NCBI GenBank assembly: GCA_020536535.1
Contig: JAHLWZ010000193.1
Coordinates: 1-64,000, forward strand
DNA: 64,000 nt
Reading direction: 5' to 3'
Source: Pelomyxa schiedti
Taxonomy: Eukaryota; Protista; Evosea
Numbering within the stretch: the stretch's first letter is position 1; each line of letters starts with the position of its first letter. The translations under genes were made by a program, and so were the position numbers. A model generated the notes under the pieces. It did no database searches, had not been told where the DNA came from, and saw nothing but the letters and a program-made list of their open reading frames with translations. Positions 20,876-30,100 of this stretch are shown in pieces.

Positions 20876-23800
20876 ATGGCGGCTCGGTCTGGTGTTGTAC
20901 CCCCAGCGGCGTCGTCAGCCAAGCACGACGGCAGATCTCTTAAGGACAAATTGGTCGCGTTGTCGCACGCCCAGGTGGCAGAAGCCGTTTCAGATGCACT
21001 GGAGACAGTCCCACCCTCCCATGAGCTATTCCCGGGGCTTCCAATAGTAGAGGTGCCCGAGGTCGTAGTCTCGCCCGCCGAGCCCGACGCGACCAAGCTT
21101 GCGGAGAGGAGCGCCGCCAAGTTGAATCTGTCAAAGATTGTTGTCAGTGCTGATCCAGATCCAAATTTGGTGTCGGACGATTTTGGAGACAGAAGCGTGG
21201 CGAGCGGTTGTTGGGCCCACAGGGTTGCCAAGGTAATTTCATTTCGGCACCCAATGGGGATGTCTCTTTAATTATGGTTGTCAAGTGTCACTTTTGTTTT
21301 AGTTTCCAATGATGTTGGCTCTGTGTGGTCTTGCTTTTCTCGTTGGCATTGCTGGTGGTTTTAAATTTTATTTGATGGCTCACCTGTAGCGTTATTTCTT
21401 TTTTTTTTTTTAGATGTATGAGGCAGATTCGGAGGATCTTCCACCATTCCCAGCAGCTTTTTTTGTGATACGTAGAGATGTGTTATCTCGGTCTTATGTA
21501 AAGCGATCATCCTTGATTGTATTAGAGCTACATGTTGGGGGTTAGGTCCAATAAATTTCTTCTCTCTGCTTTTCACAACAACTCGATACACCGGGAAAGT
21601 AAAACTTAAGCAACACACAGTTGAGAAGCAAGATTGCTCCTATCATTTCCGCACGTCAGTGACTTCTGGCACAATTGAAAAGATCGATAAAGGCACTGCT
21701 AGGCATATATATTATCCTGCTCGAACCATACAAGATGCCAAAGCAATTTATGGTTCTCTTCTCAGAGAAAAGGTAAAGTTAGAAAACTGTTTAATTTTTA
21801 TTGTGTTTGCAGACTTCAAAAAGCAACAAATATAAGAAAATAATGTTGGCTCTCTCTAACGTGGGGACTATCACAGGTTTCCATTTCACTGGTCCCTTTT
21901 CCCTTAAAATCTTTCCTAGGTAGTATTTCAACACTCCCAGTAGCTGTCCGTGACTTGCTTGTTCTCTTATACAACGAATCCGTTTTGCAACTTTGTCAAA
22001 AGGAAATCCAACTTTCAAAGCTGTCTGCACCACAAATAGACAAGGCTCTTGTGTGCCTTAGCAAATTGCAACAGGTTACCCTTCTTTCTTGGCTGTACAC
22101 AAACCCTTGTCCCTATTAAGGCAATTTCCTTGCATGAACCACTTGATGAAGCCACAGCCCAGCAGTTATCAACAGAATTTTATTCTAACTTACCTCTTCC
22201 CAACCACAAACAAGTGGTAAGAATTCTCCAGTCGGAAACTTTGTAATTTTTTTTCAAGGTCATAACCTCAAGTGATAGCCTTCTTATGTGGTTAGATACA
22301 CTTCAAACAATTCGGGATTTTTCCAACTTCGGTGAAAGTTCTTTTGACTTCACTGGGCGATTGAACGATGTTGATATGTTGTATCCTTTTTAATATGGAC
22401 AATTTATAAGACACCCAAGTACCTTAACCCCCAAGATACTACTCTCTCGACTGTAAACTCGAGCCTCTTCAATTTGATTCCTCTGAGTACATTTCTATCT
22501 GTGAAATGGTTTCCAGACATGCACCCTTGAATATTGGAAACATATTCCATGTATCAAGGCACATGGATCTCAGCTCCTTCTCGTCAGAAATGGGAAATGA
22601 AATGCTCCTCTTTCATGGATCGAAAATAGGCAATTGGTTGGGAATCCTTTCTCGAGGGTTGCTCCTCCCACAGATAGTAACTTCAGAGTATGGAGTAAAG
22701 CGTACAAATGCTGGGAATATGGGAGCAGGGCTTTATTTTTCCGACAGTCCACTGGTATCACTTAAGTATACCACTCCTTCTGCCTCCGGCTCCAGGTTAT
22801 TGCGGTATTCTCTGGAGGTCTCTAATTCAATGCTTAGGTATTTACTCATCTGCCGAGTGGCCCTTGGAAAAGTTCACATTTTGACGAACTACAATTTATC
22901 TCTGGTTGCTCCCCCACATGGGTTCAACAGTTGTCATGGCGTCAAGAGCACTTATAATTTAACAAGTGATTTTGACGATGATGAGTATGAGCAATCAACT
23001 TACATTAGGGGCTGTTCCCTTTTCATGTAATTCTCAGATATGCTATCTACACACCTGCTCAGCAATACATCCAGTATCTAGTTGAAATAAAGGGATACCA
23101 ACCGACAATGTTAGCTTCATCGACGAAGTCTATGATTTCTCAAGCTCTTGCTGGTATGCGGGAACGGCAGCCTGTATATTGTGCAGACATTCCGGGGCCA
23201 CTTCTTGATGTTGAACCTGTAAGTCATTTTGCACTCTCTTTCATTAAATCTCCAAGGTAACCGAAAAAGCGGGCCTTATCTCAACAAGTGGAGAGCCCTT
23301 GCCACTTGAAAGTGTTAGCCTTCACGCTAAATTGATAGGTTCTTCCATAGAGTCAATTTCCATAACAAACAAGCCTTTTAGACTTGGTTGGCCAGGTCGT
23401 CATACTTCAAGAATATCATAATTCAGGAGACTCCGCCATCCAGGCCAAATATGTCTTTCCTTTGGATGAAAAATCTGCCGTTGTTGGCTTCGAGTGTTTC
23501 ATTAATCGTATTCTTCGTCTTCATTTGTTTTCGCTTTAAACCGTTGCAGACAAACATATAGTGGGTGTGGTGAAAGAGAAAGAGCAGGCGCATAAGGAGT
23601 ATAAGGAAGCCATCGCACGTGGTGATGGTGCATACCTACTAGATGAGGCCAAATCAAATGTCTTTACTGTTTCTGTGGGAAATCTACCACCCCATACCAA
23701 AGTGGTTATCAAGATAACATGTTCGCAGGTTTCTTTTCGATAATCATTAACTATTTCTAGATATCACTGAACTTGGTCTTGAAGGTGATGCTAGAAAGTG

Positions 23801-26800
23801 GATTTGTCCAGTTAACCTTGTATCACAGCAAAAACAAGGCGCACTGGCTCAGGTCACACAGGCCTCAACCAAGTCAGTTCATGTTGCACAACATGAGGTA
23901 CTGTCATATGCTTTACGTTTCCTTATCCTATCAGGGAGCGTTTACCATGGAAGTCTCAATAGCGATGCCTCATGTGATTCATGCAATTGAAAGTCCATCA
24001 CATTCGATTCGCTATAAGCAGGCATCCAAGAAGGCAACATTATTCCTATTGGATCATGGTATGATGATTCTGGGTGCTAAAAAAGTGCATAAGAAAAAAA
24101 CCCAGAGGCTCTCAGTAGCGACTTCATTCTTGTAATTCGTCTATGTGATAGCCACACACCATTTATGTGGGTTGAAAAACATCCTTTGTGTATCAATACT
24201 CCTGATAATGAATTGCACGTTGCAATGGTGGCTTTGTATCCCTCTTTGAGTTCTCCGGAGGCACATTCACAATGTTTCCCCTTTGTTTTGTTTTGTGTTA
24301 ATATTCCCAGATACACTTATTATTGATCAATCTGCTAGCATGGCCTCAGCACAATTACAGTGCAAGCAAGTGGCACTGCAATTGCGTACCCTTCATCCCC
24401 CTAGAATTACCGTAATTCTTTGTAGTAAACGGGATACCACCTCTGGCGAACTTCAACCTTGTTATATTTGGCTCTTTCTTTGAAACTCTCTTTCTTTCAT
24501 CAACTCAAAAAACACGACAAACTGAAGAGATTGCTGTGACTACTATTAAAAGCATGGCTGCTGATTGGGGTTCAAGTGTTTTGTGGCCTACTTTAAAATC
24601 AGTTCTTCTTGAAATTGAGTGTAGAGCACATACCTCTGACAAAACGGAAGATACAAATATTTTCATTCTCACAGATGGGGATTTTTCTCACGATTCCCAA
24701 GTTATGAATGTATGTATGGTGCTCCCTAGGCCCACACAATCCTCAACCAATTTATTTTTTCTCTGCTCCAGCTTCTTCGTGATCACTGCCAAATTAAGAA
24801 GCATTCAACTCGCATTTTCTCATTTGGGATTGGGAATACTGTTCACAGACATAACGTCTTGAGTCTGGCCCGAATTGGAGGTGGTGAATGTGAATTTGTT
24901 TCCTCCACAAATCCTTTACGGCGACAGGTGACTGCGTCAAGTCTGGGGTAGAAATTTAACTATTTCTTAGGTGTATAGGCAATTGGAGAGGGCTAGACAA
25001 CCATGTCTGAAAGATATCAATGTTAGGTGGGGGGCCACTGCAAGTTCCAGTACCGTTCAACAGGCACCGTCTCAGATAATGACCCTATTCAATGGAGAGC
25101 GCACAATAATATATGCATTTATTCCTTCGGACTGCCAACAAGTTGTGACATTGATGTACTTGAATTGCTAAACTTTCTCAGGTCACACTTCATGCCACAG
25201 TAAACAATACCAACGAAGAGTACCATGCAACAGTCTTCTCTAATGTTGCTGAAATGGTGGAAGGGCTTACCCTCCATAGACTTTGTGCTCGGGCAATAGT
25301 CCGGTATGTTTTCTTGAAATATGTTATATTTCACCTTCTTACTAGAGATTGGGAAGAAATGTGTTTAGGGGAGGATCCGGTATCAAGTGAAGTGGCTCGA
25401 GCAAACGTGTGCATTCCTTTTCTATATGCAGGCATTGATATCCTGTAGCAAAAAGGGGAGATTATCCAACTTGGAATTCGTTACTCCCTTGCAACAACCC
25501 TGACCTCTTTTATTGCCGTTGAGGTAAGGATTTTTCCTTCTGCTCGATTTTCATTTTTTCTACAGGAAAGAACTGAGGCAGAAAAGAAGGGGTAACATTT
25601 TGGGGAACAAAAACACTTTTAATCGATTTTAAGAGATGTTAAGTTAAAGCCAACTCCTCCAATAAACGATTTGGCTGTGCAAGAAAAAGTCGATGAGCTT
25701 CCATTTTGTACCAACTGGAAAGAAGTTGTGTTACCTTCCCCCGGCACATTGGCAGTTAACACACGGACACCATACCCAGCAACAAAGCATTCAACTGTCT
25801 ACGACTACTGGGTATACAGCCCCCCAAGTGACAACGTTCCTCCATTACAAACAGAAAATCCAAGTGTGTTCATTCTTTATTGCAATTTTCTTATTGATTC
25901 CCCACAAGATTGGGAACTTACAAATAAGCCCAAAGGTTACCTTTCCCACTATTATTCCATGGCCTAAACAAACCCTACAAGATGATTGGAATGCCTTTCC
26001 GAAGAGAAATGAAAGAGCATTTCCAGCTTCTGGAAGGCGTGCCCGTAGAGGATATTTTGGAGGTGGGGACATCGGTGGAGGTGGAGGTGGAGCTGGTGGC
26101 GAGATAGCTTCGAGATTCCCACCACTTGCCTTAGGAGATTTATGTGGTAGCTCAGATGTTATGATGGACGGGATTTGTGATATCAATGAGGAGGAAGAAT
26201 GTCTTGAAGAAAATGATGACGATTATGGGGAAGAACCTATGGATGGTGATAATGTGGCGTTTTCCAAAGATGCACCTCCATGTGACATACCTCTAGCCAG
26301 CTCAGCCGCTCAGCCAGCTTCCACGGAGACAAAACCGAATCTCGGAACAACGCCACCTTCGAACAGTGCCTTGCGTTCGCTTTCTCCACAGCTCCGTACT
26401 GGGAAGGATGCCCTCGACCTTCTCGATTGCCAAGGGGCTATTATTCGGCAACAAGATGAATGCCTTGACAGAATTGAAACCAACATTTCCCAAACCAGAT
26501 TCCTTGCAGCATCCATGAACAGAGAATTGGGCGAACACACTAGATTGCTGTCAGGAAGCTATGAGCTGCAAAGGGCTGAAAGGATGCAATCCGCTGGCTG
26601 CTGCTTTATTGCCACCGCAGCCTATGGCACAGACATGGACCCCCGGATAGATACGCTGCGCCGTTTCCGTGACACAACACTTCACAAACACTCACTCGGA
26701 CGAGCGTTCACGCGTTTCTACTATGCGACATCACCCCCTTTTGCCAAGTGGCTCACCCAACACCCCTGGGCCAGGCTCACAGTTCGCATTCTACTTCTTC

Positions 26801-26940
26801 CACTCGTAACCTTACTTGATCACCTGGGTTATAATCCTCACTCTGAGAATTCCCCACAAGATGCAGCAAAGACCTTACTGACACTGCTTGCGTTCCTCTC
26901 CTTTCTTGGTTTGGCTGTCCTGCCCTTATTCATATTCTGA
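20876..26940 (+). CDS. PARP4: PARP4/vault-PARP-like ADP-ribosyltransferase (WGR-like, PARP, VIT, vWA) with C-terminal half-SNARE motif, CFI-box-CTERM domain and tail anchor
   Basis: LLFHGS..GILSRGLLLP..GAGLYFSDS..CRVALGK..FDDDEY (H-Y-E triad) at about 22600-23000; VIT (AKYVFPLDEKSAVVGFE..VFTVSVGNLPP) at about 23290-23770; vWA (IIDQSASM, FILTDG) at about 24310-24990; last exon ends in a hydrophobic tail at 26940. Confidence 0.9.
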
Positions 26941-27195: not shown

Positions 27196-30100
27196 ATGTC
27201 GGGAACTACTGGCGATTTGAACGCTGTCAGTGCTGTTGGTGGTGAGCCTGTTGGAGAAGGAGTGCAGTCGCCACCACAACCGCAAAATGCCCTCCCATTG
27301 ACGCAGCCGCAACAAATACCGGCGCAAGCTACGCAGGGACAGCAATCTGTACCAGCTCAAACGGAGCAAGTGCAGCAGCAGCAACAACAGCAGAAACAGG
27401 GGGTTGGTGGGGAACAAACTGCTACGGCTACGGCTACGACTACGGCGCCGGCGTCGTCACCGTCGCCGTCACTCGATGAGGGAGAGCCCGAGGAGGAGGT
27501 GTTCACCAAGGAGGACGAAGAGGCATGCTTGAGAGAGTATTACGAAATAGAAAAGAGTTTAAAAGGTGGTTGCAAGCTTTTTGGGTGTATGTCGTTTTAA
27601 CGAGTTTTCACCAGACGGAGACCTGGACTACTTGAAACAGTTTTCTGCTGAGACATTGGAGTGCACCCCAAAACATCTATTTATGTGGAGGTCTATATTC
27701 CCACGTACGGTGTTGGTTGTTTTAAAAAAACGGTATGTCTATTAGATTTTCCCACGTTTCTTGTAACTCACTGTTAAGCTAGGGACCCAGATGAAGACGA
27801 TTTTGAGAAAATAGGCAATTTCTTTGTAGAGATGCTTACTGCTGTTTGTCGTTTTATTGAGCTTGAGGTCCCTGAAATGATGGACCTTGTTGTAAAAATA
27901 TTCACCACAAGATACCCTTTCTACAATGATGCAGATCCCTCTGATGTACTTCCTTCCAAATCTCCTATTTTTCAACCAAGCATTATCCCATAGACTGAGG
28001 AGCTCCTGTGTCGGCTGGGAAAAGTCTTCCGTAAAAATTCTGGCTACCGAAATTTATTTAGACAGATGGCACTTAGCAAAACTATGCCTCTCACCCTTTT
28101 CTGTACTATCTTGAAAATCATCCACAAGGTACCCAGAATGTTTTCCACTAGTGTTTATCTCTTTAGGCACCTGAGGATGCTGTCAGTGATCAGCTCATTA
28201 AAAAACTACCTGAGATTGTAAAAAAAAGGATTTTTCAGCTTACAGCTGAGGAGGTAAGGACTGAGTCCAAGAGCACTATTTCTATCATAATACATCGTTT
28301 CCAAAAAATTTTGCACAAGGTAGGATTTCCTTCCCTCTCTATTTCTTCCTTGACCTTTCACAAATAGTGCGATGTTGAAGATGCTGATCGGTTTGTAGAT
28401 ATACTTCTTCTAGAAGTTGCCAGGATTTACTTTAAGTGCCCATTTTTGGAGAAGAGACTGCTTGGTCTTAGTGATATCAAAGTTCTCTTCTTTCATGATC
28501 TAATTATATGAATTGATACATCACCAAGTTCATGTTGTACTTGTGATTTCCTGTCAAACACCATACCCCTGTCTCAAACTGTGCACTGACTCTTTCTCAC
28601 TTAGGATATCATTAGACGTTTGTCTTCAGAAGATAAAAAGCACCGTTCCTGGATAACAACTCAGTATGAATTTTGCTTATTTATTTAGGTAATTTTCTTT
28701 CCAGGTACATGATATCATGGATAAAGGATCAGCACATAATATCAACACTCTTTGGCAATTCCAAACACTTAGAACTGATTAGGCGGTGTGGCTACATTGT
28801 CAGGTTTCTTGCCCAAGAGCAGCAGTTAACTCTGGAAGAGATACAAGAGATTTGGAATTCTTGTCTTGTATGGTTTTACATGTATTGATACTGGAGTTTG
28901 ATCACATTTCAACAAGGGTCAACATGAAACAGTAATCTCTGCTGTGTACTCACTTCTAGAGCATATTGCATACTTTCTTAATGAAGAAGCAATTCAATAC
29001 ATCTATTCGCAGTTTAGGGCCATTCCCTACAGCAATTATACCACACAGGCCATACACTTCCTCTGTGATTTTTGCTGTGAAACACAAGTAACTGACGTTG
29101 ATCATTTCAATTTATAACTTCTTCTTGTTAGGACTCACGCTTTGGTTTAGACATTATCTGGGACTTAGTTCAAGACACTTCTCCAGTATCCACTGATCTT
29201 AGCCTTTACATTTGTGAAAAATTAGGGGAGATTCTCAAAGCACTACCACTCAGCAACTCCCAAAGGTGTCTTTCAAGAAGTTTCCTACTTCCTCCTATGT
29301 CTTAACACAAAGAAAGAATATACTACTTAGGCATGCTTCTCGATAATATTCAAAATCATCTCTCTATTCCACAGTCTTTGTACCTTTACCGTATCATTCT
29401 TGGTATCCCTTCATGTCAAATGTGTTCCTTTAACATTGTGGAAGAGGGTAAACATACTTCCCCTGAAGAACTTACAGAACGGGTTCAACTCTCTATTTCT
29501 CCGTTCTTTGCAGTAAGTGCGGTGTACTATTGATATGAAATAACTCCTCAAGGACTTGCCTCATTGGAAAGAGACTGCTCAGAGACTACCACCCACTTCG
29601 TGCGTTTGGAGTTGTTTCTTAAGTAGTTCCTGTTAATTGTTGCCAGCAATGTCGAAACAGTTGTTTCTGGAACAAAGTACAATCTCTTCTACCACGTTAA
29701 AGAGAGGCTCGATTTTATTGAATTCATATGCAAATCTAAATACCAGCTGGATCAACCTCAAATTGAGGTTTTTTTTCCCCCCCTTTTGACTTCATGTGGA
29801 CTGTAACAAATCTGCACAGATTTTCTGGGACACTCTCGTTGTTGGTGCCACCAATTCACAAACACGAGGGGTAGCGCTAGAGTGGGTACAAAGTGTTTAT
29901 TCTCTTGTCCCAGTGGTATGGATCCTATTTTTACAACCACTTTCAATCCTTTGTATTCACTTTGAAAAAGCGGTTGATGGAATTTATCTTCCTCGAAAAA
30001 TTTCCCCTGTTGGACTTCTCCTCACTCACGAAGATCTCTTTTGACACGTTGTGCTTCTTGTTTTCTGCAATTAACCAACAACGTGGGCTCCTGAAACGAG

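What the first reader, a model, noticed from the sequence alone, without database searches (positions are those of the whole stretch)
26599..26830. CFI-box-CTERM domain in a eukaryotic, intron-containing gene
Seen: GCCFIATAAYGTDMDPRIDTLRRFRDTTLHKHSLGRAFTRFYYATSPPFAKWLTQHPWARLTVRILLLPLV. Established from recall: this matches the CFIATAAYG..LR.FRD..L.....G..F...YY..SP..A pattern of the C-terminal CFI-box-CTERM domain of bacterial and archaeal proteins, proposed as a sorting or anchoring signal. Inference: horizontal acquisition of the domain from prey or endosymbionts, grafted into an intron-free terminal exon. The Cys-Cys pair might be lipidated or mark a processing site.
Basis: partly seen in the sequence, partly recalled or inferred. 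Interest (0 to 1): 0.8.

Follow-up and report, generated by a model that had tools for sequence, protein, structure and literature searches.

The report
Bacterial-type CFI-box domain in amoeba PARP4
A 69-residue C-terminal domain otherwise typical of bacterial and archaeal surface proteins really is encoded, expressed and in frame at the end of a spliced PARP4-like gene of the anaerobic amoeba Pelomyxa schiedti. It looks like an old domain capture reused as part of a membrane tail anchor, and the scan had already found it on this gene's sister copies.

Summary
Window 26602-26808 (+) matches NCBIfam NF041770 (CFI_box_CTERM) end to end at 94.5 bits against a cut-off of 40. It lies in the last exon (25979-26940) of an expressed, many-intron PARP-VIT-vWA gene of Pelomyxa schiedti. 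A 21-residue linker and a terminal transmembrane helix follow it.

The genome holds four such genes. The other three carry a phase-2 GT..AG intron at the same codon inside the box, and so does a homologue on an environmental eukaryotic contig. This copy has none, most likely by loss.

The domain is very common in prokaryotes: 21,148 clusters, and at least 591 species genomes in many phyla. There it ends secreted surface proteins, usually followed by a transmembrane helix and an Arg/Lys tail. I found eukaryote-type versions only on VIT-vWA or PARP4-like proteins, from four organisms. None has basic residues after the helix, which fits a tail anchor with the box facing the cytosol.

An old prokaryote-to-eukaryote capture is the best reading. 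No donor can be resolved. A fresh graft into this exon is not supported, and neither is a functional Cys-Cys pair, because only the second Cys is invariant.

The scan already reported this family on other DNA of the same genome (s1-377881, s1-377930, s1-411116). The function remains inferred.

The parts
26602..26808 (+). CFI-box-CTERM domain (NF041770, profile 1-69/69). AlphaFold2 predicts four helices, at residues 9-15, 21-32, 38-60 and 62-84 of window:26581-26937.
   Evidence: 94.5-95.2 bits, cut-off 40; invariant columns kept; mean pLDDT 88.7
26599..26601 (+). Extra Cys codon just before the invariant Cys (the 'CC pair'). It is not conserved in the family.
   Evidence: Paralogues read AAC, GGC and AGC before FIATAA. 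Only the L014 homologue also has CC.
26809..26871 (+). Hydrophilic linker of 21 residues between the box and the transmembrane helix. It is longer than the median 6.5 residues in prokaryotic members.
26872..26937 (+). C-terminal hydrophobic helix of 22 residues that ends the protein, with no residue after it (tail-anchor type). Stop codon TGA is at 26938-26940.
   Evidence: helix 92-118; 0 K/R after the helix
25979..26940 (+). Last exon, about 320 codons. It holds a low-complexity Gly-rich and acidic stretch, a coil at 26410-26580, the CFI box, the linker and the transmembrane helix. The acceptor is set by the RNA joint 25932>25979, and the frame continues by arithmetic into the 25666-26937 open frame.
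   Evidence: joints 25590>25633, 25863>25909, 25932>25979; colinear contigs 26201-26884 and 26234-26933
22428..23027 (+). Exons with the PARP catalytic domain of the same gene.
   Evidence: PF00644, 77.2 bits; joints 22793>22836 and 22984>23038
23366..23740 (+). Exons with the VIT domain of the same gene.
   Evidence: PF08487, 36.7 and 72.8 bits; joints 23507>23550 and 23720>23761
24093..25592 (+). Exons homologous to the vWA region, and to the region after it, in the paralogue P0003. The single exon pieces give no Pfam hit in this copy.
   Evidence: tblastn to C4 and C975 paralogues, 45-88% identity; VWA_3 in P0003; no hit for the pieces

Best explanation
Window 26602-26808 encodes a genuine CFI-box-CTERM domain at the end of an expressed, multi-exon Pelomyxa schiedti gene for a PARP4-like protein (PARP catalytic, VIT, vWA-like region).

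Origin (inferred). The box, together with a following transmembrane helix, was captured once from a prokaryote by an ancestor of a small group of amoeba-like eukaryotes, into a VIT-vWA gene. It then spread by gene duplication. It has been in eukaryotic genomes long enough to gain a spliceosomal intron. This copy later lost that intron.

Mechanism (inferred). The protein has no signal peptide, and the hydrophobic helix is its very last element with no basic residues after it. The protein is therefore inserted as a tail-anchored protein. The enzyme and the four-helix box stay on the cytosolic face, and the box acts as a folded membrane-proximal base of the anchor.

This is the opposite side of the membrane from prokaryotes. 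There a signal peptide, surface domains and an Arg/Lys tail after the helix put the box outside the cytoplasmic membrane.

Shown: domain identity, gene structure, expression, paralogues, the shared intron site, the prokaryotic distribution and the charge bias. Inferred: single capture, intron loss, topology and the anchoring role.
For: Domain identity.

Eukaryotic, spliced, expressed gene:
- One search shows at least 15 GT..AG joints and colinear RNA contigs over the box.
- One search finds PARP and VIT in upstream exons.
- The organism is fixed by P0003 = KAH3768093.1 (P. schiedti), which lies on a 466,869-nt contig equal to G000:C4. The published assembly figures also match: 52.4 Mb and 5337 scaffolds (PMC8887013).

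Family:
- There are four copies in the genome.
- C975 and C4 are colinear PARP-VIT-vWA paralogues; C476 is a vWA-VIT type.
- A phase-2 intron splits the codon AG|R after 'LR.F' in C476, C975 and C4, and in the environmental contig L014.
- P0006 is the spliced C476 product recovered from a transcript contig.

Other eukaryotes:
- L017 carries a PARP4-like ORF with box and transmembrane helix next to an RPC5 gene.
- L013/P0070 is VIT-vWA plus box plus transmembrane helix.

Prokaryotic abundance and partners.

Topology:
- 85 of 92 prokaryotic box+helix proteins have more K/R after the helix (mean 4.0 after against 0.36 before).
- All 6 eukaryotic tails have none after it.
- P0003 has no N-terminal signal peptide.
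- P0004 keeps the prokaryote-like spacing, with the helix 6 residues after the box. This suggests box and helix came together.

Fold: a confident helical model.
Against: - The domain tree does not recover the eukaryotic sequences as one clade: 4 changes, none forced by a supported branch. The AU test only fails to reject one clade, p = 0.239.
- No donor lineage is identifiable.
- Eukaryotic genomes other than this one could not be searched systematically, so 'small group' rests on one HMMER search whose top 150 hits I inspected.
- Topology is inferred from sequence only.
- The last box helix is fairly hydrophobic, so a membrane hairpin is not excluded.
- The function of the box is unknown even in prokaryotes: no paper, no solved fold and no conserved neighbouring gene.
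- The Arg codon at the intron site is CGT here but AG|R in the intron-bearing copies, so a simple cDNA-mediated loss needs later substitutions.
Confidence: 0.7

Rival explanations
1. Recent graft. The box was acquired recently from prey or an endosymbiont and joined to this particular gene as an intron-free terminal exon.
For: The box-bearing last exon of this copy has no intron. P. schiedti lives with bacterial and archaeal endosymbionts (PMC10579272). The domain occurs in Syntrophales and related Thermodesulfobacteriota.
Against: - Four paralogues share the box.
- Three of them and a relative have an intron at the same codon inside it.
- Homologues exist in at least three other eukaryote-type sources.
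- The best prokaryotic identity is only 51-57%, with no outlier.
- The paralogues are only about 54% identical to each other in the box.
Confidence: 0.04
2. Cleaved sorting or processing signal. As proposed for prokaryotic C-terminal sorting domains, the box is recognised and the protein is cut or lipidated at the invariant Cys, in the amoeba too.
For: The prokaryotic layout (motif, transmembrane helix, basic tail) resembles LPXTG and PEP-CTERM signals. The Cys at the first position is invariant. Small residues precede it in the amoeba copies.
Against: - A 69-residue, confidently folded four-helix domain is much larger than known cleaved signals.
- There are only 1-3 copies per bacterial genome.
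- No conserved neighbouring enzyme appears in 80 loci.
- In the amoeba the predicted topology puts the box in the cytosol, away from any exported processing machinery.
Confidence: 0.12
3. Ancient shared domain. The CFI box was present in early eukaryotes and inherited vertically, then lost almost everywhere.
For: The box is old enough in this lineage to carry a conserved intron. It occurs in organisms as different as GC 37%, 45%, 52% and 60%.
Against: All eukaryote-type hits share one architecture (VIT-vWA ... box ... terminal helix), whereas prokaryotic partners are extremely varied. Only 5 of the top 150 representative clusters are eukaryote-type. No named eukaryote other than P. schiedti appeared.
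Confidence: 0.08
4. Assembly contamination or chimera. The box belongs to a bacterial fragment joined to an amoeba contig.
For: The assembly comes from single cells full of prokaryotic symbionts.
Against: The box is in frame with, and on the same RNA contigs as, the amoeba-specific upstream sequence. The paralogous boxes contain spliceosomal introns. A spliced transcript product exists (P0006).
Confidence: 0.01

Closest known systems
CFI-box-CTERM domain proteins of bacteria and archaea (NCBIfam NF041770)
   Same: - The 69-residue domain is covered over its full length with all invariant residues.
- It sits near the C-terminus and is followed by a hydrophobic helix.
- The predicted four-helix fold is the same as in bacterial and archaeal Atlas clusters (TM 0.66-0.69).
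   Different: - The host is a eukaryote.
- The gene is spliced, and the paralogues have an intron inside the box.
- The N-terminal partner is a cytosolic-type PARP4-like enzyme without a signal peptide, not secreted surface domains (FN3, PKD, CARDB, peptidases, Calx-beta).
- There is no Arg/Lys tail after the helix.
- The linker is 21 residues long against a median of 6.5.
Vault poly(ADP-ribose) polymerase PARP4 of animals (PARP-VIT-vWA)
   Same: The order of the PARP catalytic, VIT and vWA-type regions is the same. GenBank names the paralogue PARP4.
   Different: From general knowledge, animal PARP4 ends in a soluble region that binds the major vault protein. Here the C-terminus is a coil, a CFI box and a membrane helix. 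That predicts a membrane-bound enzyme, not a vault-bound one.
Tail-anchored R-SNAREs (synaptobrevin family)
   Same: The paralogue P0003 has a Synaptobrevin-type motif upstream of a C-terminal membrane helix. The helix is the last element of the protein.
   Different: A 69-residue folded domain plus a linker lies between the motif and the helix, whereas SNAREs join them directly. In this window's copy no SNARE family is detected at all.
Prokaryotic C-terminal sorting signals (LPXTG/sortase, PEP-CTERM/exosortase, PGF-CTERM/archaeosortase)
   Same: In prokaryotes the order is conserved motif, then hydrophobic helix, then basic tail, at the end of secreted proteins.
   Different: The CFI box is a folded domain, not a short motif. 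There are only 1-3 carriers per genome. No dedicated neighbouring enzyme was found. About 40% of members end without a separate helix.

Membership tests
CFI-box-CTERM (NF041770) | Score above the curated cut-off of the family model | tested here: met
   94.5 bits against 40, E 2.4e-27; 95.2 bits in the genome scan
CFI-box-CTERM (NF041770) | Whole domain present (profile 1-69) | tested here: met
   Profile positions 1-69 of 69 matched, with no stop or intron
CFI-box-CTERM (NF041770) | Invariant and near-invariant residues (CFIATAAxG, LRxFRD, YYxxSPP, RxxLxP) | tested here: met
   All 7 invariant and 17 near-invariant columns of the 148-row alignment are defined on, and present in, the window sequence
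CFI-box-CTERM (NF041770) | Position at the C-terminal end of the protein | tested here: met
   43 residues follow the box. In 165 of 173 family hits the domain ends within 60 residues of the C-terminus.
CFI-box-CTERM (NF041770) | Extracytoplasmic setting (signal peptide, surface domains, basic tail after the helix). This is typical of prokaryotic members and is not part of the model. | tested here: not met
   No K/R after the helix in any eukaryotic copy, against a mean of 4.0 in prokaryotes. The paralogue has no signal peptide. The partner is a PARP-type enzyme.
PARP4-like (PARP-VIT-vWA) | PARP catalytic domain | tested here: met
   PF00644, 77.2 bits, on window 22428-23027
PARP4-like (PARP-VIT-vWA) | VIT domain after the catalytic domain | tested here: met
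   PF08487, 36.7 and 72.8 bits, on two exons
PARP4-like (PARP-VIT-vWA) | vWA domain after VIT | tested here: inconclusive
   Exon pieces give no Pfam hit, but they align to the region of P0003 that scores VWA_3. The joined model was not searched.
PARP4-like (PARP-VIT-vWA) | C-terminal vault (MVP) binding region | not testable with these tools
   No model is available. The C-terminus here is a box plus a membrane helix instead.
SNARE (synaptobrevin or Qc type) | SNARE motif recognised by a family model, directly before the membrane helix | tested here: not met
   No Pfam family at E <= 1 on the 415-residue last-exon frame. The paralogue P0003 does score Synaptobrevin, but that region does not align with this copy.

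The most novel reading that the evidence does not exclude
The CFI box is a self-contained membrane-interface module that works on either face of a membrane. A lineage of anaerobic amoebae turned a prokaryotic outer-face surface-protein anchor inside out to tether ADP-ribosylating PARP4-like enzymes to a specific endomembrane. That membrane could be, for example, the vacuoles that house their prokaryotic symbionts. This would be a first case of a prokaryotic C-terminal anchor domain reused as a eukaryotic cytosolic tail-anchor element, and it would offer an experimental handle on a domain of unknown function present in tens of thousands of prokaryotic proteins.
Probability: 0.12. Interest if true: 0.7.

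Novelty: new variant of a known kind. Interest (0 to 1): 0.45.

Why it matters
The CFI box is widespread, with over 21,000 protein clusters, but I found nothing published on it: no paper, no solved structure and no known partner.

A eukaryotic family that keeps every invariant residue, yet has changed the partner protein and apparently the side of the membrane, says two things. The box is a functional unit in its own right, and it probably does not depend on a prokaryotic processing enzyme.

The family is also a clean example of domain-level transfer from prokaryote to eukaryote that can be dated relative to intron gain and gene duplication. It predicts a membrane-bound form of the otherwise vault-associated PARP4 type of enzyme.

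The practical value is moderate. The organism is hard to work with, the function is still inferred, and the same family was already reported by this scan on the paralogues.

Tried and rejected
- Literature: no paper contains 'CFI-box-CTERM' or the motif string.
- Pfam: there is no model for the box.
- Protein-language-model Atlas search: only weak archaeal and bacterial clusters at 0.89-0.90.
- Fold search: Foldseek against PDB found nothing at E <= 0.001. VIA-align against 48,161 chains gave a best Z of 4.0, which is noise for helical models.
- Domain phylogeny (148 rows, 74 columns): unresolved. The eukaryotic rows were not one clade in the quick tree. The AU test does not reject one clade, p = 0.239, after four runs. 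Neither a donor nor monophyly can be claimed from the tree.
- Conserved neighbour in prokaryotes: clustering the ORFs of 80 loci gave no family in more than 6 loci.
- Copy number per bacterial genome: only 1-3, so this is not a many-substrate sorting system.
- Viral vector idea: 8 viral contigs carry the box. The one inspected (L101) is an ordinary prokaryotic phage or prophage context, and no giant-virus link appeared.
- Bacterial origin of P0004/L017: rejected, because its neighbour is a eukaryote-specific RPC5 gene.
- Contamination: rejected.
Full report
**1. The observation**

Against NCBIfam the stretch scores 94.5 bits (E 2.4e-27) on NF041770.1, CFI_box_CTERM. The curated cut-off is 40 bits, and all 69 profile positions are matched. 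The six-frame scan of the whole assembly places the match at 26602-26808. Pfam has no model for it. In a 148-row alignment of family members the invariant columns (C8 A11 T12 R30 L34 Y47 A55, numbered on window:26581-26937) are all present in this copy, and so are 17 near-invariant columns.

**2. Where it sits**

- **Genome.** It has 52,367,397 bases in 5337 contigs. The paralogue on contig C4 (466,869 nt) is GenBank KAH3768093.1, 'protein mono-ADP-ribosyltransferase PARP4 [Pelomyxa schiedti]', recorded on a contig of that same length. The genome paper gives 52.4 Mb and 5337 scaffolds, with 7.4 introns per gene (PMC8887013). The organism is therefore P. schiedti, an anaerobic archamoeba.
- **Upstream exons.** On the + strand they encode a PARP catalytic domain (22428-23027, 77 bits) and a VIT domain (23366-23740). 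Further exons are colinear with the vWA region of the paralogue.
- **Expression and splicing.** Contigs from single-cell RNA-seq of one study show at least 15 GT..AG joints of 37-53 nt between 22793 and 25979, and five more were not listed. The last three joints are 25590>25633, 25863>25909 and 25932>25979.
- **Reading frame.** Frame arithmetic carries the frame from exon 25633-25863, through a 24-nt micro-exon (25909-25932), into the long open frame that holds the box.
- **RNA over the box.** Two RNA contigs, 26201-26884 and 26234-26933, are colinear with the DNA across the whole box.
- **Last exon.** It runs 25979-26940, carries the box without an intron, and ends in TGA.
- **After the box.** A 21-residue hydrophilic linker follows, then a 22-residue hydrophobic helix that is the very end of the protein.

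Exons were searched apart, by reference.

**3. Other copies and their partners**

The genome has four box-bearing genes: C193 (this window), C476, C975 and C4. C975 and C4 are colinear, exon by exon, with the window gene from the PARP region to the end. C476 shares only the VIT part and the tail, and its exons score vWA and VIT.

In all three other copies the box is split after 'LR.F' by a phase-2 GT..AG intron of about 50 nt that cuts an AG|R arginine codon. P0006, a 155-residue product from a transcript-type Logan contig, is exactly the spliced C476 reading. This window's copy has CGT at that codon and no intron.

A 115-kb metagenome contig, L014 (GC 37%), holds a full PARP4-like multi-exon gene that is 88% identical in the VIT exon. 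It has the same intron site in the box, a 34-nt GT..AG intron cutting AG|A.

The most divergent paralogue (C476) also has the intron. One loss in C193 is therefore more economical than repeated gains at one codon. This is an inference.

**4. Other eukaryotes**

- L017 (GC 60%) carries an uninterrupted 621-codon frame homologous to the vWA-to-end part of the window gene. It has a box 65% identical to this one, and a terminal helix follows it directly. Sixty-eight nt downstream lies an RPC5 gene (RNA polymerase III subunit, 213 bits), which marks the contig as eukaryotic and intron-poor.
- P0070/L013 (GC 52%) is a 987-residue protein with VIT, vWA, box, linker and helix on a transcript-like contig.

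The box therefore occurs in at least four eukaryote-type organisms, always behind VIT-vWA. Of the 150 best representative clusters, five are of this type.

**5. The prokaryotic family**

- **Abundance.** HMMER over 1.84 billion representatives found 21,148 clusters at E <= 0.001, and 4006 at E <= 1e-10.
- **Spread.** In species-level genomes, at least 591 stretches encode the motif across many lineages. These include Chloroflexota, Gammaproteobacteria, Thermodesulfobacteriota, Bdellovibrionota, Myxococcota, Nitrospirota, candidate-phyla-radiation lineages and Bacillota. All of the 80 loci kept (of at least 591 found) are 36-57% identical to this copy, and no near donor stands out. Atlas clusters add Archaea.
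- **Partners.** They are secreted or surface modules: FN3, PKD, CARDB, LRR, Calx-beta, DUF11, and peptidases C25, M4, M6 and S8.
- **Copy number.** Five genomes checked have 1-3 copies each.
- **Layout.** In 165 of 173 hits the domain ends within 60 residues of the C-terminus. Of 154 prokaryotic tails, 92 have a separate hydrophobic helix a median of 6.5 residues after the box, and 62 do not.
- **Charge bias.** In 85 of those 92, Lys/Arg are enriched after the helix, with a mean of 4.0 after against 0.36 before. By the positive-inside rule, which is established knowledge, the C-terminus lies in the cytoplasm and the box outside.
- **Neighbours.** No neighbouring gene is conserved across 80 loci.

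**6. Fold**

AlphaFold2 run with the 148-row alignment gives mean pLDDT 88.7 and pTM 0.72. The box has helices at residues 9-15, 21-32, 38-60 and 62-84, and the tail has a helix at 92-118. No solved structure resembles it: Foldseek returns nothing, and the best Z is 4.0. The nearest Atlas models are all bacterial or archaeal CFI-box proteins.

**7. How it most likely works here**

The paralogue's N-terminus has no signal peptide. PARP catalytic domains and, in the paralogue, a synaptobrevin-type motif are cytosolic features. In all six eukaryotic tails examined, no Lys/Arg follows the helix, and the few basic residues lie before it.

I therefore read the protein as tail-anchored. The enzyme and the box would be on the cytosolic face and the C-terminus in the lumen. 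The box would then be a folded, membrane-proximal base of the anchor, on the opposite side of the membrane from its prokaryotic relatives.

P0004 keeps the prokaryote-like tight spacing of box and helix. This suggests that box and helix were captured together and that the Pelomyxa copies later lengthened the linker.

All of this is inference from sequence. I put about 0.5 on the topology and anchoring role. I put about 0.75 on a single old capture from a prokaryote, and about 0.97 on the domain and gene being genuine.

**8.

- The domain call and the eukaryotic, intron-containing host are right.
- 'Grafted into an intron-free terminal exon' describes this copy, but it misleads about history, because the box is shared, old and intron-bearing elsewhere.
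- 'Prey or endosymbionts' cannot be tested. The tree is unresolved, and a single eukaryotic clade is neither shown nor rejected (AU p = 0.239).
- The Cys-Cys pair is not a family feature. Only the second Cys is invariant.

**9. Novelty**

The scan had already reported this family on the paralogous genes (s1-377881, s1-377930, s1-411116). A first-stage note exists for the whole gene in this window (s1-626515). I used those notes only as leads and re-tested the claims.

This report adds:
- the intron-less state of this copy, with RNA support;
- the conserved intron site in a second organism;
- a eukaryotic marker gene beside a third homologue;
- the reversed charge bias;
- the low copy number and the lack of a conserved neighbour in prokaryotes.

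The domain is a member of a known family, and the architecture and inferred topology are a new variant. I found no publication on the domain.

Noticed in passing
window 25909-25932: A 24-nt micro-exon lies between GT..AG introns of 45 and 46 nt. It is seen as two joints in one RNA contig.
   Followed up: partly
window 26410-26580: The coil that other first-stage notes call a half Qc-SNARE gives no Pfam SNARE or Synaptobrevin hit at E <= 1. The C4 paralogue scores Synaptobrevin at residues 1424-1475. The two regions do not align by BLASTP.
   Followed up: partly
L017:193-3520: This is a contig from an unknown GC-rich (60%), intron-poor eukaryote. Its PARP4-like frame ends in a CFI box plus a helix, and the last three residues are all Cys. 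Only 68 nt separate it from an RPC5 (Pol III subunit) gene.
   Followed up: partly
L014:3900-9430: A 115-kb metagenome contig (GC 37%) from a Pelomyxa-like eukaryote holds a full PARP4-like gene. It has the same intron site in the box and also a Cys-Cys start. Near-identical fragments occur in two other runs.
   Followed up: partly
P0013; L101:2296-3246: Some bacterial CFI boxes sit on non-surface partners. P0013 is a protein with an eCIS core domain (PF13699). L101 carries a 316-residue box protein on a phage or prophage contig, beside a ParB-methyltransferase gene.
   Followed up: no
window 22591 and 26379: Two single-contig, low-depth RNA differences from the DNA were seen, T>C at 22591 and G>A at 26379. 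They may be alleles or errors.
   Followed up: no
window 27197-27600: The next open frame on the + strand starts about 257 nt after the stop codon. It encodes a Gln-rich, low-complexity N-terminus.
   Followed up: no
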